Positions 14,881 to 28,666 of a stretch of DNA of 64,000 bases are shown here, piece by piece. Both the position numbers and the translations under genes were made by a program. The stretch covers positions 1 through 64,000 of the forward strand of contig JAWQFM010000029.1 in assembly GCA_033442325.1 (NCBI GenBank), in the 5' to 3' direction. Every line of letters begins with the position of its first letter. Positions within the stretch are counted from its first letter, which is position 1. The stretch comes from Salpingoeca rosetta (Eukaryota; Protista; Choanoflagellata). The notes beneath the pieces are model-generated. The model did no database searches. It had not been told where the DNA came from and saw only the letters and a list, made by a program, of their open reading frames with translations.

Positions 14881-15182
14881 CCGCCGGCCGCGCCCTGGAG
14901 CTGATACGCAAGGCGGGCGTTGTGGGCGTGGACGTGGGAGTGAAAGAGGACCTGTTTGCTTGCCAGTGTATGGTTGACGTGTGGTGTGGTAGTATGCTCG
15001 TTGCTTGTCAGCCGGTTGAATTGCGTGAAGAGTTTACTAAAGTATCAAACAAGCAACGTCAAGCAAGGCAAGTGAAGTGGCAAGCAAGCACGTGAAGGAA
15101 AGACAGAAGCAAAGGAGCAAAGTGACCAACCAGCAAACCAGCAAGCACAGACACACACACACACACACAGCACAGCACACAG

Positions 15183-17648
15183 TCAAGTGGTGGTGTTGAT
15201 GCGGTTGTTGATGGCGGTGCACCAGTCAGCGAGCGAGGTGTCAGAGTGCGCGTCCAGGCGGAAGACGAAGGTGCGGCCGGGAACAGCAACGTGCATCTCC
15301 TCGCCACCATGCGCGAGCTCAGCTGACAGCACGCTGGAAAGGGGGATGCGCCGCTTGGCCGTGCCTGAAGCGGACTTGCCGTACGCGAGGTGGCCGTCGT
15401 CGTCAAACTTGCACCAGCACGGGCGAAAGGCGGCCCTCCGCCGCCCACGCTTCCGCAGCCAGCCGGCAACAGGCTCACCAGGGCACTTGCAAGCGTCCTT
15501 GTACAACGCTCTTGCTGGTGCAGAGCAGCCACGAGGACAGCCGTGCCCAGTCCCTGTCTTCTTGTCTTCATTGTCGCTGCCTGTGTTTGCTGGGCGTCTT
15601 GCGTCAACATCAGCATGTGCAACTGCACCGAGAAATCGCATGAGCAGGTTGCGTTGTGGAGCAAACGACTGGTATACAACAGCAGAAGAGATGAACCGAA
15701 GCAGAAGGTTGCGATGAGCAAGCACGTTTTGCTGCTGAAGTCGAGACTCTGACACGTGTTGCGTGGATGTGTGCTGCCTGGTCACAGCACCACCGCGAAT
15801 GCGCCGCAGGTTGCGCTCCGCCTTGCGGGTGTTTGGGTGGTTTGCTCCAAGCGTGGTCGCGAAAACGTCGAGTGCCTGCTGGACATAGGCGCAGGCCTGC
15901 TGCTTGTCGCCGCGCTTGGCGTGCAGCAGGCCGATGTTCTCAAGCGTCATGGCTACGCTCGGGTGCTTTTCGCCCAACGCTTCCGCCGTGATGGCGAGGT
16001 CCTTCTCGTACAGCTGAATGGCCTTGTCGAAGTCGCCCTTGCTGCCGTATACAAGGCCGAGGTTGTTGTACGTGTCGGCTGTGCTCGGGTGTTTCTCACC
16101 CAACGTCTCCACCGCGATGGCGAGGGCCGTCTCACAAAGTTGGATGGCTCTGTCGTGCTCCCCCTTGTAGGTGTAGACGATGCCGAGGTTGCCGTACGTG
16201 CTCGCTGTGCTTGGGTGCTTCTCCCCCAGCATTTCCACAAAGACGGCGAGCGCCTTCTCGTAGTGGTGGATGGCTTTACCGTACTCGCCCTTGTCGACGT
16301 AGGCGGCGCCGAGGTTGTTGTATGTGTCGGCTGTGTTCGGGTGCTTCTCGCCCAACGTCTCGATCCTGATGGCGAGCGCCTTCTCATAAAAGGTAATCGC
16401 CTTGTCGTACTCGCCCTTGCTGTAGTGTGTGTTGCCGAGGTTGTTGTACGTCGTGGCTGTGCTCGGGTGCTTCTCGCCCAACGTCTCCACAAACACCTCC
16501 TTCGCCTTCTCATGCAGCTCAATGGCCTTGTCGTACGCGCCCTTGCTGAAGTAGGCGTTGCCGAGGTTGCCGTAGGTGTCGCCTGTACTGGGATGTTTCT
16601 CGCCCAGCGTTTCCACTTTGATGGTGAGGGCCTTCTGGTACAGCTCAATGGCCTTGTCACCGTCGCCCTTGCCGCTGTATGCATTGCCGAGGTTGTTGTA
16701 TGTGTCGACTGTACTGGGGTGTTTCTCCCCACGCGCCTCCACGAAGACGGCGAGAGCCTTCTCGAAGTAGTGGATGGCCTTACAGGAGTCGCCCTTGCTG
16801 AAGTAGGCGTTGCCGAGGTTGTTGTACAGCACCGCCACGTTCCCTCCTTTCTCCCCTTCGGTGCGGAGCCGGATTGCCAGCGCTGTCTCGTAGTAGGCAA
16901 TGGCCTTGTCGTGCTCGCCAAACTCGCTCAGCACCGACCCAACCGCACCGCACAACTCCGCGAAGGCATCAGTGCTGTCCTCGCCACGCGCTCGCATGGC
17001 TTCGACGGCACCCACCGCCTTTTGCAGGCACCACGCGCGCAGCTGGTCCTTCACGGCCTGGTTGACTGCGCTGAAGCCGCCCGCCCACGACTCGATCGCC
17101 GTGAAGATCATGTGCTTGTCGTGTGGGTTGAAGGCGTCGGCTCGCTCTGCCTGCACGCGCACCAGCGTGTCTGTGACGGCTTTAAAGTCACCCGCGATGG
17201 CTAGGACCAGTTCTAACTCCTCGCTCTTGGGCAGTTGGATGGTGACCTCTGTGCCTTCGTTGCTGATGCCACAGAAGATCTCCCACAAACACCACGCGCG
17301 TGTCAAGGGAACAGGGTCCCGCCACGGCATGAGCACCAGCAGCACATGGCCAATGTTAGCAATGGACTCCTTGAATGTGGTGCTCCACCTGGGTGTCGAG
17401 AAAGGGAAAGGAAAACGGGAACGGGTGGAGGGAAGACGAAGACGGGGAGGAAAGGGGAAGGGGTTGCAGTTCTTGTGAGGGAACAGTGTGCGTGTGTCTG
17501 TGTGCGTGTGCGTGGGTAGCAGTGGTTGTTGAAGAGCACAAGAGTTTCACACACACACAGCTGCACACACACGCACACACACAGCTGCACACAGACACAC
17601 AGACACACACACACACAGCTGCACACACACACACACAGCTGCACACAG

Positions 17649-17700
<52 letters not shown>

Positions 17701-18088
17701 CGCACCACTCTTGTGGGAGGTTGGCCGTGACGTTGGCGTTTTGGTTGTTCATGAAGAGGTCAAACCAGAAGAACACGGGCTTGCTGTCGTCTTTCCTTGC
17801 TTGCTCATCCGCAAACTCCAGCAAGACGTTGAGCACGTCTGCGATCTTGTACCGCCATGCGTGCGACACAAACACGGTGGCCTTGTCTACGTGTTCTGGC
17901 GACTGCTTGTGCAGCTGCTCGACGTAGGCGCAGTTGTCCTGGCGCGTGCGTGGCACAACCAGCTGCTTGCAGGCATCCTCCGTAGTCATCTCAGTGTACG
18001 TGTCGGGGAACTCGCTCTGCAGGTCTGCGAAGAAGGTCTTGATCGCCTCCACAGACACGCCGTCTGTCAGGCGGTGCTCGTTGGCCAT
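15183..18088 (-). CDS. HET/TIR-like domain + 9 x 42-aa TPR + C-terminal PH domain protein (~862 aa; exons 18088-17706, 17388-15183)
   Basis: A GT-AG intron joins LPQEW|WSTTF in frame (2589 nt, divisible by 3). N-terminal motifs VFVSHAW, FFWFDLF.NNQ and TRAWCLWE. Kinesin-light-chain-type repeats [29 protein letters not shown] motif VAGWLRKRG...WCKF...LAY...RIPLSSV...GRTFVF...LADWCTAI. Confidence 0.9.
15826..16970 (-). repeat. 126-bp coding tandem repeat (nine TPR units)
   Basis: gggtgcttctcgcccaacgtctc-like and gccgaggttgttgta-like words recur at 126-bp periodicity. Confidence 0.9.
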
Positions 18089-20203: not shown

Positions 20204-20614
20204 TCATTGCACCAACGCAAGCGGCTTCAAGAACAGGTCCTCACGCAACAAGTTGTCCAGCTCGTCCGTCAGCGTGCCCGGTGATGTGGTGTGCGCTGGC
20301 GACGTATTGGGCAGCATTGTGGAGATGTGCGTCTCACCAGCGAGTGCTGCATCCTCCACGTCTGCAAGCGCGTATCCGGCAGGGAACGGGTGGAGGCACG
20401 AGAGGTGGACGTAGCTCAGGACGAGATGGTCATAGTCAATCCCTTGCACCTCTTCCTCCACCTCAGCCAACATCTGCACGCACCACGTCGGTTGCAGTTG
20501 GAATTGGCAGTGAGGGCAATGTCGAATAGTGTGTGGTGACATCTCGCACATACCACATCCATGACACGACGCAACGCAAACCACAACACTATGCAAGAAG
20601 CCAGCGTAAGGCAG

Positions 20615-20673
<59 letters not shown>

Positions 20674-20711
20674 ACACACACACACACACACACCATAACG
20701 TACATACTTAC

Positions 20712-20788
<77 letters not shown>

Positions 20789-23289
20789 ATGTCGAGAGCA
20801 AGCCAGGCGTCCTCCTTGAACTTGCTTGGGCAGCGCACCCAGAGATCGATGCGCTCATCGCCGATGATGCGCCCGTAAAGCTCGACGGGGGCAAACAGCG
20901 TGATGAAGCCGTTCTGCCACACGCTGGTGCCGGCGCCGAAGCAATGCACCATGCGCGATTGAATGCGCGGGAAAACGCCCGGAGGGAACACCATGCCAGA
21001 CTCTCGGGGCACGACGAGGCCGCGGCCCGCGTACACGTCCATGCTGGCGTCTGCAGGATTCCACAGGCGATCAGGGTCCCACTGCAGCCGCGACGGCAGC
21101 ACAAAGTGGCGCTCGCTGCTGTTGTGAACGGCCTGGTCTTCCTCAAAGCACAACAGCATGCTTGCAAGCACATCCACCACGGTGTCCGCGGGCATGATGC
21201 GCCCGAGCTTGGACTCAAACTCGCTGAAGGTGACGCGGCCGTTGGTTGTGTGCAGATGCTGTGGGAACCGCTCCGGCGCGAGCGATGGACCAACGACCTG
21301 ACGCAGCAGCCACGGAGGCGACACGAAGATCTGGTCGGCAAGCGATGGAACCGCGTGAAACCACAGCACATCACCGCGCACATGCAAGTACCTGCTCTCG
21401 TGCAATGTGTGTGTGTGGGGGGGGTATGTGAAGGCTGGGTGAAGCGAGAACAGGCAGATTGAAACAAGTCATCGGCATCTGCGAATGAGTTAAACCACCC
21501 CCCCCCCCAACACACACACCCACGAACACATGCGCACCGGAGTGTTTTGCGCAGGACGGACTCGTCAAACTCGAGCGTTTCGCGAAGATCGGCAACGCGC
21601 TCCTTGATGGCAGCGAATAATTTGGCGACCGGCCACGGCCCTTCGTCCTGCCGCCGGCACACGCGGATGCCACGTGCAATCAGCTCCACCACCTTTGGCA
21701 CCCTCACCTCCTGCTGCGTCACCTCCACCCACGCCGCGTGCAGCAGGTCCCGCAGGTGCTGGGTGCCGGCGTCCCGTGCGTCGTGGCAGCGGAGCGGCAC
21801 CAGGAACGGGTGCACGCGCATGGCGTCGCCAAACCACTCCCGCAGCCGCGAGCTGTGCAGCAGCCCGTCGCCGGCCGGGAACAGCTGCGGCGGCGGGGAC
21901 ACGGCGCTGTTGGTGGCGGTAGCGGCGGGCGTGGATGCAAGAGCGTTCTGCTCGTGCACCTTGTCTGCCTTCGTGCCGACAACGAAGACGTGGGGTGGGT
22001 GCTGCGAACGGTGAACGGCCTGTGCGAGGCGCGTTTTGATGAAGCGGAGCCAATACAGCACAGACTCCTCCACGGTGGCCTTGTCCTTGGACAGGTCCAC
22101 GCACACGACAAAGACGGCGTTGTGGTCCGCAAACAGCAGCTCGTGCACCACGTGGTACTCCGTCTGCCCGGCAAAGTCATACACGCGCAGCTTGCAGCGG
22201 GGTGCGCTCTTGCTGGAGGTCGAGGCACGACTGCCGCCACCGTTCTCATCATCGTCATCGCCCTCGTCCTCATCACTGTCGTTATCTCTGTCGCTGTCCG
22301 TGCCAGCGTGCAGCCAGTCTGCGCTGGCGTTTGGGTCATCGGGCGCACACGATGACGTGGATGCCGTGAGCACAACGCTCGCAGACGACCGCTTCCGCCG
22401 CAGCGCAAAGTCGTGCATCTCAATCCCCGGCGTGCGCTGCTCCGGGTGGTCTGGTTCGTCCAGCACCTTGCGCCGGCGCCGGAACAGCGTCGCAAAAAAT
22501 GACGGCGACGCCTGCAGCGTGTTGATGAGTGTCGTCTTGCCGATGCCTTGATGTCCGCACACGAACACCTTGGCCGTGGACAGCGGCACGGAGCCGAGCT
22601 TGAGCAGACTCCCCAGCGCCTCCTGCCGCTCTTCGTTGCGCTCGACGACGGTCATGATGCGATCGTCCAACCCGTCTGACACTTCGTCCATGTCAACGCT
22701 GCAGGCGTGTGGTGTGTACACGTGCATTTGTGTGTGCGTGTGTGTGCGTGTGCGTGCGTGTGTGTGTATGTGTGTGTGTGTGTGTGTGGTTTTGTGTACA
22801 TGTGTGTGTGTGCATGCGAGTTTGTGTAAGTGTCGTGCATAGTGACAGGATTGACATGAGCTCATCGAAACACCACATGCGATCGGCTAAATGACATGTG
22901 AACTGATTGCATGCTGCACTCTTGACACCCAACAACCCACACCGCATACGCACATACACACCACACATGCACACCACACACATCACACCACGTCACAGTA
23001 TCACATCCCCCCCCCCCCCCCCGGCGGCCACAAATTACACGGCTGTACTGACTCGAGCTCGATGATGCGGCGGTTGACGCGAAGAGCGCGCAGGAGCTGG
23101 CGCGCTTCCGTGTCGGTGATCTCAATTTCAGAGAGGCTGGTAAGTGCAGTGGCAGGGTGCGGTGGGGTTGGCAATGTGGCAATGTGGGTGCGGCCAATGG
23201 CACAGGATGAGGATGGGGCTGAGCGGAAAGCAACGACGGTGGCCAGGAGAAAACGTGCTGTACGCACGCCCAGCAGCAGGCACGCAAGT

Positions 23290-23334
<45 letters not shown>

Positions 23335-23372
23335 CGCATGCACAAGTATGCACACACATGCACACGCAACCA

Positions 23373-23428
<56 letters not shown>

Positions 23429-24877
23429 CACACACACACGCACACACGCACACGACTTACTCGATTTCTGCCAGGCCTTGGTTGATGGCAAGCGTGTTAC
23501 AGATGAGGCGCCAAGCTTCAGATGTCATGACGTTGTCCCGAAGACTGGTTGGGTGATGGACAAAACAATGCGCAACGGCGAAAGGGAACGAAGAGCATGT
23601 GATGAGCACACGCATGACGGTCTTTGGCATGACTGCTTCCATTCCCTCTGCTGTTGATGCGGCAAGCAAACCAAAGCATCGACAAAGTGCATCATTTCAC
23701 TGCGATCAACCAGCAGCACCACACACACACACACACACATACACACACACACACGCAATCTGTACCTCAGACAGAGGAGCGTTCGATTGACCCTGAGCGC
23801 ATCAGCCAGCGCCTTCACACCAGAGATGTCGGCCTCCGAATCCGACTCTGCGTCTTCCGGCACACCAAGGAGATCGTTTTCGCCCAACCTGACACGACCA
23901 ACAACCACGACATGTGTGTGTGTGCAAGTGTGTGCAAGTGTGTGCAAGTGTGTGTGTGCAGTGTGTGTTTGTGGGAAGAGGTGAGTTCACTGGCCTGGCT
24001 CATTGCACGTAACACAACAACCTGATGATTGGCATGTCTCACCATCGAATCCACCCAAACAAACAAACACGAACGCGTGCATGCACACACTAACATACAG
24101 ACAAATGTGAGTGCGACGACGCAACATATCCACAGTGCACAGTCACGATGCTCATTACAGGAGGATTTGAAGCGTTGTGTTCTCCTGGAGCGCTTCGCTT
24201 ATGGCCTTCAGGCCGCGCGGTCCTATTCCGTTGTCTTCCAAACTGCGCAACCGCCACGATGGCGTGAGCGGCACAAGTGACAGCAGCGGACGGTGGTGAG
24301 AAGGCGACGGCTGAAGCCCGCACGTGCAAACGCACACACGCACACACGCACACACGCACACATACACACACATGCACACGAAGCACAGAACCCCCCTCCC
24401 CCCCCCCACACACGCACACACATGCACGCATGATTGGACTCACTCCAATTCAACGATGGAAGTATTTCGCTTGAGAGCGTCGGCAATGGCGACTGCGGCA
24501 TCTGGCCCGATCTCGTTTCCTTCCATACTGCGCAGACGTGACGACGCAACGGTCAGATGAGCAACACAGGCAACGCCCATTGCACAAGCACACTGCAGGT
24601 AGGCACAACAGGAGTTGGTAGTCTGAAGACATGTTGGTGCGCGTGTGCATGCGTCAGTGCACGCTTTGGTGCTCATGTGCACGTGTGTGTGTTTGCCTTC
24701 GGGCCCATGGTTCGCATCACTGACTTGAGGGTTTCGAGTGTGGTGTTGAACGGAAGCGCAGCCGCAATCGCCCGTGCTTGTTCGCCGTCAATTTCAATGG
24801 TGCTGAGACTGAAGGCAAAACAAGATGTGTGCGTGTTTGTTTGTTTGTTTGTTTGTGTGTGTGTGTGCGTGTGTGTG

Positions 24878-24940
<63 letters not shown>

Positions 24941-25228
24941 GCAAGAGCAGATGCACAAGAGATGCAAGAACGATGCAATCTGCAAGTGTCTCTCGATGCA
25001 CCAAAGTAGCCCAAAATGACCATCAAGGGTGCACTCACACGCCACACAACAATGGCCTGATCAGCATCACGTACTCGAGATCCTTAACGGTCGTGTTGCC
25101 CTTCAACGCCTCGCCAAGCGCACGCGCCATGTCAAGTGTGAAGTCGTCAACAAAGCTAGTCGACGACACAGCGAACGATGTAACAACCGAGAAGCAGCGT
25201 CAGTGAAAGTGGCGGCGCAGTGTGCGTG

Positions 25229-25267
<39 letters not shown>

Positions 25268-26840
25268 GCGTCTGTCTGTCTGTCTGTTTGTCTGTGTGCA
25301 CGCTCAAGAATCCAGGAGCTCATGAAATTAAGAACACACAGAGCAACAGTGCGCGCGAGACCCCAAAGCCGAGCATGCGCACTTGCTTCTCCGCGCTTCC
25401 TTCCAAATACACGCACTCCCTCTCCCTATTCCGCCTCTGTGGCTTCTCTTACGCTTCCTCTTCGTCGCTGGTGTTGTTCCAGATTGATAGGATGATCTGC
25501 TTACACGCGGCCTCGTCCTTGATCCGCTCAAAACACTCGAGAAACACGCGCTCGTCAGCAACCCCCGCCGGCTTCGATGCAACATGCTCATGCACCGCCT
25601 TGGGGCTGTCGCTGTGCTCTCCGTTTGCTGGGTCCCCCTGCTGCTCATCGCCATCCACCATGGCCAGAGCAGCAGCATCGTCCTCCCTGAGGACGCCATC
25701 CTCTGCCGTGCTGTCCACACCATAAACTCCAACATTACCGCCGTCCGTGTCACCATCGCCTTCCCCTCCACCCTCCTCGCCCTCAGCACCGGCTGCCTTT
25801 GCTCTCGCCGCCTTGCCTGCTTTGCCTGCCTTTTGCGCGCGCTTCGTGATCCCGCGCCACGTGCGTGCTCGACACGCTCGCAGAAATCGCGCGACCACAG
25901 CTGGGGGCAACTTGTTGTTCGCGTCGTACTTCTCGCGCCTCAGCATGTCCTCGATCAGCTGCGTGGATGCGGGTTCACCCTGGCGGCCTCCGTTCGATGC
26001 TGTTGCCATTGCATGGGACGCGGCCCTGGCCCCCTTGCCACGTTGCTTGTGCTTGTGCTTGTGCTTGCGCTTGCCAGCGGCTGCCTCGGCATCACGGCGG
26101 AGGACCGCACGCTGGCGCGTGTTGCGCAGAGCTTGCGTGGCCTGCTCAAGGGCCTTCAGGTTTGTGATGCCCAGGCGCTCAAGAACGTATCCGACGGTGC
26201 CCAGCAGCCTATACTTATCGAGCCACGGGGTGAGCTCGGCGTCCAATCGCGGCGGCGCACGGCGAGGGGACACCGCTGTGCCCGCGTCCCCGGCACCAGT
26301 GACAGCGCCCAACTTCTTCAGGATCTGCGGCACAAGCTCTGCGGGTGGTGCCAAGCGGCGAGGTGTCGTGGCGGTGCCATGCGCCGGTGTGCCACAATCA
26401 GGGTTCCAGAGGAAGTAGGAGATGTCGGCGGGGAGGCGGAAGCGTGTTTGCTTGACCTGGAACTCGTCACACATCTTGATGAGGAAGTAGGGCTTCTCCT
26501 CGTTGATGATGAACCTGAGCTCCTCGAAGGTGCTGAACTTGGAGGCCGTCTTCTTTCCGTAGGTCTTTGTGCCCATGATGACAGCCAGGTCACAGTCTGT
26601 CAGTGCTGTGATGATCTCCTCCGAGATGTCGTCGCCAGGCGGCACATCACACAGGAAGACGTCCACATCATGGCACGCTTCGTGCAGCGCCTGCTTGAGT
26701 TCCTTTGCCGCTTCGTGCGCCTCGCCAAACCGGAGTGAGATGAAGATGCGCTTCTTCTTCGCGACCGGTCGGCTTTGCTCCGAGTGAGATGAAAGTTCGC
26801 CGTGGACGGCGGAGGAAGAAGAACTGAGAGGGGACGTCAT
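20204..26840 (-). CDS. Roco protein, TIR - SAM-like - LRR - Roc GTPase - COR (~1348 aa, 11 exons: 26840-25453, 25155-25075, 24808-24725, 24527-24444, 24242-24159, 23888-23766, 23544-23461, 23136-23053, 22698-21538, 21391-20788, 20473-20204)
   Basis: All introns are GT-AG and the frame is preserved (4047 nt). TIR: [51 protein letters not shown]-like: [24 protein letters not shown]-type LRRs: L..N.IG..G..A.A.AL..NTTL..L. Roc: [50 protein letters not shown]: [41 protein letters not shown]. Confidence 0.9.
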
Positions 26841-27295
26841 GGGGCTAACTGCTGGTGTTGATAGGGTCTTGACGCAGCTTCAGAGGTGTCATTCACTTCT
26901 CTACTCTTCTACTTCCACTTGTGACCCGACTGTTGATCTGTGTGCGAGTTGTGGGTGTGACGTGAATGTGGGAGCGCCAGTTGGCTCTGTTGTTGTTGTT
27001 GCGGTCAGTGGAAAGTGTAGCAAGTCATGACGAATTCTCTTAGCGGAAAGCAGCAGCAGAACACACACCCACCACACCCACACCCACACCCACACACACA
27101 CACCCACACCCCCCCCCACCACACACACACACAAAGAGCTCGCACAATACTTACCCCACACACACACACGCACACACATCACCCACTGTCCGTCAAAAGA
27201 ACAACGGTGGTCATGTCAAATCAAGCAGAGAGCAGAGTAAAGTCAGAGAGAAAGTCGAAATGTAATGATAAACACCTAAACACATGTATGCATTG

Positions 27296-28666
27296 TCACT
27301 TGTTGTTGACATGTGTGTCAAGTTGTCCGCAGTCCAAGCTCTGCACGGTGCGCTGGTGGGGTGCCTTAGCCATGCATTCCTGGAACTTGTGCGCCGCCCA
27401 ATCCAGCGAGTGCAGCCGGGAGTAGAGGTGGATGTCCTTCACATGCCCGCGCACGGTGCTGTCGGGCTGGTCCAGCCGCCCCTCCGGGATGTTGAGCAGC
27501 GGCGGCGTCGCCGTGTACATGTGGCCGGCGGCGATGCGGTCCAGGAGGCACTCATCAGCGACGATGCATGGGAAGCGCGGGAGCTTCTGCAGCCACACCT
27601 TGAGCGGCCGCTGCGTCGGGGCGGCTGCATCGAGCTGCACAAACGGCATACGCATCACGTCCCGGGCGAATGTTCGCGGGACGAGGTAGGCGATGGCGCC
27701 GTACACGGTCGTTGAGTTGGGCGCGAAGGCCAGCTCGCCCCGCCACTGCTTGAAGAGTTTCTTCCACTCGCTCTCCTTGGCGGACATGGCCAGGCGCACC
27801 AGCTTCCAGTCGGCAGGCATCTTCTGCACAAAGGCCTGCAGCGTCTGCGTCCAGAACGGGAGCAGGTCGATGGTCACGTCGTCTTCAAGGACAAGGCCGT
27901 ACGGGCGGTCCGAGACTGCAATCTGGTGCAGGGCGTCGAGGTGTGAGATGGAGACGGCCGCCTCCTTCAAGTGCACCTTCGCGGGCTTGCGCTTGTCTGT
28001 CACGAGGTTCTGCAGCGTCGCTTGCGCCTGCTGTGGCGTGCCGGCGAGGCGCTGTAGAACGTTTTCCTGGTGGGTGCCATCGATAGCGGGGATTCGCTTG
28101 GCGCCCCACAGCCCAGCGACACCTTCTTCCATCTGCCCCTGTCGGACAACGTCGACGTCTCGGCTGATGTAGAGCACCGTGAAATTCTCCCCGAGAGATG
28201 CCGCAAACTTGCTGCCCAGGATACGGGAACGGGGCTGTGTCCGTGCTGTCATTGCCTGTGATGCCGGTATCGCTTCCCTGTGCATGCTGGTGTTCCGTGC
28301 GGCGCTGGGCACTTGTCGCTGTTGTTGCTGTTGCTGCTGCTGCTGCTGCTGCTGGTTTGTGAGCAGCTGCTGCAAGACATCGTACATCTGGTTGACTTTG
28401 TTTAGGATTTGGATCTCCGCAGTGCTGTTGGTTAAGTTTGAGAAGTGGTGCTGGTGGTGCTGATTAGGTGACCCGGCGAGCGGCTGTTGCTCGGTGCCCA
28501 CGTCAAGCGTGACGCTGTCCCTTCTCCTCCGCAAGGCGTCGTGGGCGTCGTCGTGGGCAGCTGAAGATCCGTGGTGGTGCCGCGAGTGCAGTGTCGTCCA
28601 CAACGTCGCACTCAGGACACACGTGGTGATCAGCACGACCACCACGAGCACTTGGTGCGGCCTCAT
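27296..28666 (-). CDS. Glycosyltransferase family 25-like type II membrane protein (456 aa, intronless)
   Basis: N-terminal anchor VLVVVVLITTCVLSATLW and a Gln-rich stem. GT25 motifs VLYIS....R...M, RIPAIDG, E.AVSISHLDAL..I, YGLVLEDDV and GAIAYLV. Confidence 0.8.
   Translation of the reverse strand: MRPHQVLVVVVLITTCVLSATLWTTLHSRHHHGSSAAHDDAHDALRRRRDSVTLDVGTEQQPLAGSPNQHHQHHFSNLTNSTAEIQILNKVNQMYDVLQQLLTNQQQQQQQQQQQQRQVPSAARNTSMHREAIPASQAMTARTQPRSRILGSKFAASLGENFTVLYISRDVDVVRQGQMEEGVAGLWGAKRIPAIDGTHQENVLQRLAGTPQQAQATLQNLVTDKRKPAKVHLKEAAVSISHLDALHQIAVSDRPYGLVLEDDVTIDLLPFWTQTLQAFVQKMPADWKLVRLAMSAKESEWKKLFKQWRGELAFAPNSTTVYGAIAYLVPRTFARDVMRMPFVQLDAAAPTQRPLKVWLQKLPRFPCIVADECLLDRIAAGHMYTATPPLLNIPEGRLDQPDSTVRGHVKDIHLYSRLHSLDWAAHKFQECMAKAPHQRTVQSLDCGQLDTHVNNK

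What the first reader, a model, noticed from the sequence alone, without database searches (positions are those of the whole stretch)
20204..26840. TIR-SAM-LRR-Roc-COR: a Roco GTPase with a SARM1-like effector pair at its N-terminus
Seen: an N-terminal TIR that keeps a Glu at the catalytic position (STFEEL, equivalent to WC..EL), a SAM-like helical segment, ~7 ribonuclease-inhibitor-type LRRs, an intact Roc (G1 GHQGIGKT, G2 T, G3 DFAG, G4 TKAD) and COR, with no kinase. Known: TIRs with this Glu are oligomerisation-activated NADases in SARM1, plant NLRs and bacterial defence. SARM1 oligomerises through SAM domains, and Roc-COR modules are nucleotide-dependent dimer switches. Inference: an NLR-like cytosolic sensor where Roc-COR replaces NACHT/NB-ARC and triggers TIR NADase activity.
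Basis: partly seen in the sequence, partly recalled or inferred. Interest (0 to 1): 0.8.

Follow-up and report, generated by a model that had tools for sequence, protein, structure and literature searches.

The report
Choanoflagellate Roco GTPase with TIR head
This is a real Salpingoeca rosetta gene (PTSG_12838) encoding a Roco GTPase with an enzyme-type TIR domain at its N-terminus, one of a small family that looks like a GTPase-based counterpart of NLR immune receptors; its function is untested.

Summary
It is identical to the public protein XP_004989891.1 (PTSG_12838, Salpingoeca rosetta), which is annotated only as hypothetical.

- **TIR:** real. A family profile hits the Roq1 TIR at E 1.7e-4, and the AlphaFold model matches about 20 solved TIR domains at Z 11-13.7. 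Glu107 in the STFEEL motif is nearly invariant across 21 homologues.
- **Other domains:** seven RI-type LRRs (one per phase-2 exon), an intact Roc, COR and no kinase are all confirmed.
- **SAM-like segment:** weakly supported, through compact homologues only. It has a low-complexity insertion, lies after the TIR rather than before it as in SARM1, and the TIR shows no special affinity to SARM1.
- **New context:** S. rosetta has at least 5 TIR-type Roco paralogues. Their sister clade carries a C-terminal PARP-like domain. The same TIR-plus-SAM-like cassette is fused to WD40 or MORN repeats in other eukaryotes.

TIR-Roco architectures and LRR-Roco candidate immune receptors are already described in red and brown algae and in molluscs. 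I therefore rate this a new variant of a known kind. NADase activity, GTP switching and any immune role are untested.

The parts
20204..26840 (-). Whole coding region of PTSG_12838 (ATG at 26840, TGA ending at 20204), 11 exons, 1348 aa
   Evidence: One search gives the exon table with all introns GT-AG. One search shows identity to public protein P0001.
25453..26840 (-). Exon 1 (aa 1-462): TIR, SAM-like module, low-complexity linkers and the conserved IWNN motif. It ends in phase 2 at donor GC|GTAAGA. An in-frame TAA at 25451-25449 overlaps the donor.
   Evidence: Conserved in-frame blocks with paralogues are shown.
26286..26759 (-). TIR domain, aa 28-185 (five beta-alpha units plus a terminal helix)
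   Evidence: Secondary structure and pLDDT. VIA Z 13.7-11 to TIR domains over model residues 8-160. Roq1 TIR at E 1.7e-4. ESM features score 0.94 to TIR_2 clusters.
26520..26522 (-). Codon GAG for Glu107, the candidate catalytic glutamate (motif S-T-F-E-E-L, aa 103-108, near the start of helix alpha-C)
   Evidence: Sequence read. Nearly invariant in alignments A4 and A7. Predicted helix at aa 104-113. The equivalence to the catalytic Glu rests on motif register, not on a residue-level superposition.
25851..26246 (-). SAM-like helical module, aa 199-330. Conserved blocks at aa 199-245 and 294-330 are separated by a lysine/histidine-rich low-complexity insert.
   Evidence: hhalign of the paralogue linker against the compact-homologue module gives 85% probability, E 6e-6, over aa 199-235. 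That module's best PDB hits are all SAM domains at E 0.003-0.1, and SAM_2 hits 2 of 12 members. pLDDT is 82-94 for aa 200-260. No fold search was done on this part alone.
25075..25155 (-). Exon 2, LRR 1 (81 nt, phase 2)
24725..24808 (-). Exon 3, LRR 2 (84 nt, phase 2)
24444..24527 (-). Exon 4, LRR 3 (84 nt, phase 2)
   Evidence: The best LRR_6 stretch, aa 539-561, spans the exon 4-5 junction.
24159..24242 (-). Exon 5, LRR 4 (84 nt, phase 2)
23766..23888 (-). Exon 6, LRR 5 with a 13-aa acidic insertion (123 nt, phase 2)
23461..23544 (-). Exon 7, LRR 6 (84 nt, phase 2)
23053..23136 (-). Exon 8, LRR 7 (84 nt, phase 2)
21711..22598 (-). Roc GTPase domain, aa ~705-1000, in exon 9. G1 is at 22533-22556, G3 DFAGQ at 22164-22178 and G4 TKAD at 21963-21974. 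A roughly 70-aa acidic low-complexity insert lies between switch I and G3.
   Evidence: Pfam Roc 37 bits. Motifs read. Best solved relative is the LRRK2 Roc at E 2.5e-5.
20381..21710 (-). COR (A and B), aa ~1001-1290, across exons 9-11 (exon 10 is 20788-21391; exon 11 is 20204-20473)
   Evidence: COR-A at E 3e-4. Paralogues hit COR-A and COR-B. Exon joins.

Best explanation
PTSG_12838 of Salpingoeca rosetta is one gene. It encodes a cytosolic Roco protein with this order: an enzyme-type TIR domain, a SAM-like helical module, seven ribonuclease-inhibitor-type LRRs, a Roc GTPase, COR, and no kinase.

Shown here:
- The architecture, and that it is fixed in at least 5 paralogues.
- A TIR fold with a family-conserved Glu107 at the start of helix alpha-C.
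- Intact G1, G3 and G4 motifs in Roc.
- The same Roc-COR core carries a PARP-like domain in the sister clade.

Inferred mechanism: the LRRs bind a ligand or hold the protein in an autoinhibited state. A change in the Roc nucleotide state, with COR-mediated dimerisation, brings the N-terminal TIR domains together, possibly helped by the SAM-like module. The composite TIR active site that results cleaves NAD+, either depleting it or making an ADPR-type signal. On this reading the protein is a GTPase-based functional analogue of TIR-NLR receptors.
For: - Gene model: identical to the public model. Four other loci in the same genome (PTSG_08667, 07288, 12575, 13127) encode the same domain order.
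- Exon phases: exon 1 ends in phase 2, as does every LRR exon.
- RNA hint: eight runs from two studies hold 0.57-0.60 of the sampled words, matching the exon fraction of 0.61. This is suggestive only.
- TIR fold.
- Conserved Glu107, and a shared F-I-S-x-R beta-A motif with the SARM1 and Roq1 TIRs.
- Effector swapping on a shared chassis: TIR-type and PARP-type Rocos are sister clades with 100/100 support. More distant Roco relatives carry CARD, Death and caspase domains, and one transcriptome protein is LRR-Roc-COR-TIR_2.
- Mobile cassette: the TIR-plus-SAM-like cassette sits on other sensor scaffolds (WD40, MORN) on eukaryotic contigs.
- Literature: an unrelated S. rosetta TIR makes cADPR when expressed in E. 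coli (10.64898/2026.04.20.719644). Choanoflagellates are reported to lack NLRs (PMC6040629).
Against: - There is no functional, expression or challenge data for this gene. No paper names it.
- Splice junctions were not seen in reads.
- Pfam TIR_2 and COR-A both score below their gathering cut-offs.
- The catalytic-Glu equivalence rests on motif register and conservation, not on a residue-level superposition. In paralogue PTSG_08667 the pair is D-Q rather than E-E.
- The SAM-like assignment is transitive and weak. The linker profile on its own finds no SAM structure, and ESM features give nothing above noise.
- Many TIR domains with the Glu are not NAD+ depleters, and Roco proteins such as the LRRKs act in trafficking rather than immunity.
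Confidence: 0.45

Rival explanations
1. Same architecture, but the TIR is a non-catalytic or weakly catalytic homotypic interaction module. The protein would work as a conventional Roco scaffold in signalling, trafficking or cell differentiation, not as an immune sensor.
For: Roco proteins have many non-immune roles, and the closest solved Roc is LRRK2. One paralogue lacks the Glu pair (D-Q), and E106 varies across the family. No challenge-linked data exist. TIR scores sit at the family border.
Against: Glu107 and the surrounding motif are conserved at 55-63% identity across homologues on unrelated scaffolds. That pattern is typical of an enzyme core rather than an adaptor surface. The best sequence matches are enzymatic TIRs: Roq1, SARM1, RUN1, RPV1 and Thoeris ThcB4. 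The sister clade carries another NAD+-using domain, PARP.
Confidence: 0.25
2. The TIR is catalytic but makes a second messenger (a cADPR isomer or related nucleotide) read by a separate effector. It would signal rather than kill the cell by NAD+ depletion.
For: In the 2026 survey, most eukaryotic TIRs with the Glu, including one from S. rosetta, produced cADPR without depleting NAD+ (10.64898/2026.04.20.719644).
Against: No candidate receptor for such a signal was looked for or found here. The protein tested in that survey is a different TIR (F2UB80), and F2UM66 does not appear in the supplement tables held for it.
Confidence: 0.2
3. Annotation artefact: exon 1 (TIR plus SAM-like) is a separate 463-aa gene ending at the TAA that overlaps the putative donor, and LRR-Roc-COR is a second transcript.
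For: An in-frame TAA lies at 25451-25449. Read-level junction evidence could not be obtained. Paralogue PTSG_06523 is an LRR-Roc protein without the TIR.
Against: Four other loci give the same fused order, with the conserved IWNN motif running directly into LRR 1. The phase of exon 1 matches the phase-2 LRR exons. No start codon or promoter-sized gap is evident before exon 2, since intron 1 is only 297 nt. Runs with a word share equal to the total exon fraction cover the whole span.
Confidence: 0.07

Closest known systems
Roco proteins with TIR or death-fold effectors: TPR-ROCO-TIR of Chondrus crispus, 'N-terminal TIR' ROCOs noted in PMC11378527, TIR-ROC-COR proteins of Aplysia (PMC9334734), and CARD/Death ROCOs of Trichoplax (as cited in PMC11378527)
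   Same: A Roc-COR tandem joined to a repeat domain and an immune-type effector domain, with no kinase. All are in-silico architectures without functional tests.
   Different: Here the TIR is N-terminal and divergent (below the Pfam threshold). It is followed by a SAM-like module and by RI-type rather than typical LRRs. The host is a choanoflagellate, and the sister paralogues carry PARP instead.
Brown-algal LRR-ROCO candidate immune receptors (PMC3341825, PMC11378527)
   Same: LRR-Roc-COR with one LRR per symmetric phase-2 exon, a lineage-specific expansion, and a proposed role as an NLR substitute.
   Different: The algal exons are 72 nt (23-aa LRRs) and those proteins have no effector domain. 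Here the exons are 84 nt (28-aa RI-type LRRs) and a TIR effector is present.
Plant TIR-NLRs (Roq1, RPP1) and bacterial TIR-STAND defence proteins
   Same: The order N-terminal TIR, then NTPase switch, then repeat sensor in plants. Roq1 is the best sequence match of the TIR. The logic of oligomerisation-activated NAD+ cleavage is shared.
   Different: The switch is a Ras-like Roc GTPase with COR, not a STAND NB-ARC or NACHT ATPase. The LRRs lie before the NTPase, not after it.
SARM1
   Same: A TIR with a conserved Glu, plus a SAM-type helical module in the same polypeptide. Structural match to the SARM1 TIR is Z 13.3 over 128 residues.
   Different: SARM1 is ARM-SAM-SAM-TIR with two canonical SAMs before the TIR (from my own knowledge). 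Here there is one weak SAM-like module after the TIR, no ARM domain, and no specific sequence affinity to the SARM1 clade.
LRRK2 / MFHAS1 / Chlorobium tepidum Roco
   Same: An LRR-Roc-COR core. LRRK2 Roc is the best solved sequence match.
   Different: No kinase, ankyrin, armadillo or WD40 domains. RI-type LRRs. A large acidic insert in Roc.

Membership tests
Roco (Roc-COR) proteins | Roc GTPase domain with G1, G3 and G4 motifs | tested here: met
   Pfam Roc scores 37 bits against a cut-off of 27. [13 protein letters not shown] and TKAD were read in the sequence.
Roco (Roc-COR) proteins | COR domain directly C-terminal of Roc | tested here: met
   COR-A at E 3e-4, 21 bits, below the cut-off of 35.3. 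The region aligns over its full length with paralogues and relatives that hit COR-A and COR-B.
TIR domain superfamily | TIR fold and sequence signature | tested here: met
   Family profile against the Roq1 TIR, E 1.7e-4. VIA Z 13.7-11 to about 20 TIR structures covering 120-138 residues. Foldseek RPPT-TIR at 8.4e-4. Pfam TIR_2 scores 27.4 bits against a cut-off of 28, so Pfam's own threshold is narrowly missed.
Catalytic (NADase-type) TIRs | Conserved glutamate in helix alpha-C | tested here: inconclusive
   Glu107 is nearly invariant in 21 homologues and lies in the predicted alpha-C. Equivalence to the catalytic Glu was inferred from motif register only, because no residue-level superposition was available.
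Catalytic (NADase-type) TIRs | NAD+ cleavage activity | not testable with these tools
   Needs a biochemical assay.
SAM domain | Five-helix SAM fold, or a SAM_1/SAM_2 profile match | tested here: inconclusive
   No Pfam SAM hit in this protein at E <= 0.1. The homologous module of compact relatives hits SAM structures at E 0.003-0.1 and SAM_2 in 2 of 12 members. hhalign links only helices 1-3. The region was not folded or searched on its own.
SARM1 family | ARM-SAM-SAM-TIR order with the TIR C-terminal | tested here: not met
   The order here is TIR then SAM-like then LRR-Roc-COR, with no ARM domain. The SARM1 order is from my own knowledge.
NLR / STAND receptors | NACHT or NB-ARC STAND ATPase | tested here: not met
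   Only a chance-level P-loop match to NACHT (E 0.014, 18 residues). The NTPase is Roc.
RI-type (LRR_6 / TMOD-LMOD) leucine-rich repeats | 28-aa repeats matching LRR_6 | tested here: met
   LRR_6 at E 4.3e-13, 48.7 bits against a cut-off of 23.4. PF27087 (LRR_TMOD-LMOD) is precomputed for this protein and its paralogues.

The most novel reading that the evidence does not exclude
A conserved TIR-plus-SAM-like NAD+-cleaving cassette is a mobile effector head. It shares 55-63% identity with homologues on contigs with eukaryotic gene content, including one in an NCBI assembly that also carries GcpE. In S. rosetta it has been placed on a Roc-COR GTPase chassis whose sister clade carries PARP. Together these Rocos would form a GTPase-switched, NAD+-targeting family of cytosolic immune receptors that fills the place of the NLRs choanoflagellates lack.
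Probability: 0.25. Interest if true: 0.75.

Novelty: new variant of a known kind. Interest (0 to 1): 0.5.

Why it matters
Choanoflagellates are the sister group of animals and are reported to lack NLRs (PMC6040629). A Roco family that couples LRR sensors and a GTPase switch to NAD+-using effectors (TIR or PARP) would show how cytosolic immunity can be built without STAND ATPases. It would also add a lineage to the parallel cases in brown algae and molluscs.

The gene is testable. S. rosetta is genetically tractable (my own knowledge), and a TIR from the same species has already been assayed in E. coli.

The divergent TIR subfamily falls just below Pfam's threshold, and the protein does not appear in the tables held for the 2026 TIR survey (one file was cut when stored). 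Domain-based censuses of TIR enzymes may therefore miss it.

Tried and rejected
- **Single-sequence AlphaFold of exon 1:** mean pLDDT 39.9, unusable.
- **phmmer of the single TIR sequence against PDB:** only chance hits such as CspZ/CRASP-2. A family profile was needed.
- **Read laying on 20991-26990:** The local tblastn used the window split on either side of them.
- **ESM-Atlas features for the linker (aa 195-335):** best score 0.81, which is noise, with SAM_TNK at rank 5 on 0.77.
- **Profile of the Roco-paralogue linker against PDB:** nothing.
- **Paralogues inside the window:** none.
- **Bacterial origin of the close TIR homologues:** considered and rejected. Their contigs carry GYF, LMF1, DENN and PDZ genes and fragmented gene calls, so they are eukaryotic.
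- **Nucleoside 2'-deoxyribosyltransferase fold as an alternative to TIR:** scores lower, Z about 10-10.9 against 13+.
- **Whether the assayed S. rosetta TIR (F2UB80) sits in a Roco protein:** could not be determined from the tables held.
- **N-terminal 261 aa of the neighbouring TPR gene:** no family match.
Full report
**Observation.** The region lies in GC-rich (about 0.56-0.60) eukaryotic DNA whose introns are full of (CA)n/(GT)n runs. Joining eleven minus-strand exons at GT-AG sites gives a 4047-nt ORF of 1348 aa. An exhaustive HMMER search with the Roc exon returned a 1348-aa public protein. It is identical, residue for residue, to my model. It is XP_004989891.1 / F2UM66, 'hypothetical protein PTSG_12838' of Salpingoeca rosetta. 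No paper in the library names the gene or its paralogues.

**TIR.**
- On its own the N-terminus is borderline: Pfam TIR_2 scores 27.4 bits against a cut-off of 28, with a weaker DUF4062 hit. A single-sequence PDB search gave only chance hits.
- Word searches then found five S. rosetta paralogues and 16 metagenomic or assembly homologues at 43-63% identity. The contigs examined carry eukaryotic genes.
- A profile of 21 of these sequences hits the Roq1 TIR at E 1.7e-4. SARM1, RPV1, RUN1 and SNC1 TIRs follow. NCBIfam gives the Thoeris TIR protein ThcB4 at 2.3e-9.
- ESM features point to TIR_2 clusters at 0.94.
- AlphaFold2 with the 22-row alignment gives pLDDT 80-96 over aa 30-150 and a five-unit beta-alpha fold.
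- Foldseek's best hits are RPPT-TIR, TIR-STING, RPP1, AbTir, MAL and SARM1.
- An exhaustive VIA-align search puts about 20 TIR domains on top at Z 13.7-11, aligning 120-138 residues. Generic flavodoxin-like folds reach Z 10 or less.
- The ESM-Atlas shape search returns TIR_2 and DUF4062 proteins.

The TIR fold is established.

**The glutamate.** The family motif is F-S-T-F-[E/Q/K/D]-E-L. E107 is nearly invariant, L108 is invariant and E106 varies. The predicted alpha-C helix runs over aa 104-113. I could not obtain a residue-level superposition, so this step is an inference. One paralogue, PTSG_08667, has D-Q at this pair.

**SAM-like module.**
- Pfam finds nothing in this protein. ESM features are at noise level.
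- The compact homologues, however, carry a roughly 70-aa module directly after the TIR. Its profile's best PDB hits are all SAM domains: ANKS1B 0.003, SHIP2/EphA2 0.018, Caskin 0.055 and liprin 0.11. SAM_2 hits two of twelve members.
- hhalign links aa 199-235 of PTSG_12838 and its paralogues to the first three helices of that module (85% probability, E 6e-6).
- MAFFT also aligns aa 294-327 to the module's last two helices, across a low-complexity insert.
- The model shows confident short helices at aa 203-264.

**LRR, Roc and COR.**
- Seven 27-41-aa repeats match LRR_6 at 4.3e-13. The precomputed family PF27087 is LRR_TMOD-LMOD. Each repeat is one phase-2 exon. Paralogue PTSG_12575 has the same 84-nt exons, and there they are near-identical copies.
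- Roc passes Pfam's cut-off. G1 GHQGIGKT, switch-I RTPGI, G3 DFAGQ and G4 TKAD are all present, with an acidic insert of about 70 aa between switch I and G3. LRRK2 Roc is the closest solved sequence.
- COR-A is sub-threshold, but the region aligns throughout with relatives that hit COR-A and COR-B.
- There is no kinase.

**Family context.**
- S. rosetta has at least five TIR-type Rocos: PTSG_12838, 08667, 07288, 12575 and 13127. The public models of PTSG_13127 run on into a TsaD domain and are probably chimeric.
- PTSG_06287 carries the same TIR on a SecA/helicase-like protein.
- PTSG_13043 and PTSG_09169 are Rocos ending in a PARP catalytic domain. PTSG_06523 is a shorter LRR-Roc protein whose COR is truncated.
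- In a maximum-likelihood tree of 43 Roc-COR regions, the TIR-type clade (100/99) and the PARP-type clade (100/96) are sisters within a 100/100 clade on a long stem. Rows P0063, P0151, P0153 and P0155, and spans of 400 aa or less, were left out.
- More distant Roco relatives carry CARD-caspase, CARD, Death, DUF3626 or a C-terminal TIR_2.
- Outside the Rocos, the TIR-plus-SAM-like cassette is fused to WD40 or MORN repeats.

One switch core with interchangeable effectors, and one effector cassette on interchangeable sensors, is the pattern seen in immune receptor families. This is circumstantial support, not a test.

**Is it one transcript?**
- Evidence for: the same fused order occurs at four other loci. 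Exon 1 shares its phase with the LRR exons, and intron 1 is short at 297 nt. Eight runs from two studies hold 0.57-0.60 of the sampled words, which matches the exon fraction of 0.61.
I worked beside those places afterwards.
- An in-frame TAA overlaps the donor of intron 1. Intron retention would therefore give a 463-aa TIR-only product. This is a hypothesis.

**Comparison with what is known.**
- Brown-algal LRR-ROCOs with one LRR per 72-nt phase-2 exon have been proposed as immune receptors since 2012 (PMC3341825, PMC11378527).
- A 2026 preprint shows that a different S. rosetta TIR (F2UB80) makes cADPR in a Glu-dependent way. F2UM66 is absent from the tables held for that paper, one of which was cut when stored.
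- Another 2026 preprint describes TIR-like NADases in NACHT proteins (TeTIR). It does not mention Roc or choanoflagellates.

**Verdict.** The NLR-analogue reading is reasonable and gains support from the family context, but it remains untested. The SARM1 analogy is loose. I class this as a new variant of a known kind and score interest at about 0.5.

Noticed in passing
window 15183-18088 (-): The next gene downstream on the same strand encodes a long TPR_12/TPR_10 (NPHP3-like) repeat array (E 2.7e-142). Ahead of it is a 261-aa N-terminal region with no Pfam or ESM-Atlas match. It may be a second immune-like repeat protein next to the Roco gene.
   Followed up: partly
window 25449-25451 (-): An in-frame TAA overlaps the donor of intron 1 (GC|GTAAGA). 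A transcript that keeps intron 1 would encode a 463-aa TIR-plus-SAM-like protein without LRR-Roc-COR.
   Followed up: no
P0004 (PTSG_13043), P0010 (PTSG_09169): These S. rosetta Rocos are sister to the TIR-type clade and end in a PARP catalytic domain (E 4.5e-5 and 1.1e-8). That is a second NAD+-using effector on the same Roc-COR chassis.
   Followed up: partly
L004:13464-13550, 15153-15236, 15830-15916: In paralogue PTSG_12575 the 84-nt LRR exons encode near-identical repeats (86-100% at protein level). This points to recent exon duplication or homogenisation. In PTSG_12838 the LRR exons share only about 28-51% nucleotide identity.
   Followed up: partly
P0087, P0089, P0094, P0099, P0113: Among the 150 best Roc-exon matches in the global library are Ank-Roc-COR proteins ending in CARD-caspase, CARD, Death or CARD-Death. 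These are apoptosome/NLR-like layouts built on a Roco switch.
   Followed up: no
P0156 / P0176 (PTSG_13127 and variant): The public models fuse a TIR-type Roco to a TsaD/Kae1 domain (E 1.4e-35). This is probably two neighbouring genes merged by the annotation.
   Followed up: no
L005 (GCA_006365155.1, VFQN01011962.1): A 57%-identical copy of this TIR subfamily sits on a contig next to GcpE (MEP pathway) and a signal-peptide-peptidase gene. The subfamily therefore reaches beyond choanoflagellates, probably into a plastid-bearing eukaryote.
   Followed up: no
window 27296-28666 (-): An intron-free 456-aa ORF upstream of the Roco gene matches glycosyltransferase family 25 (E 1.4e-5) and contains a polyglutamine run.
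   Followed up: no
window 20630-20790, 23290-23450, 24850-24960: Long (GT)n/(CA)n microsatellites fill much of introns 10, 7 and 2 of this gene. Shorter runs occur in most other introns.
   Followed up: no
The tool's own message says the filter also trips by chance.
   Followed up: no
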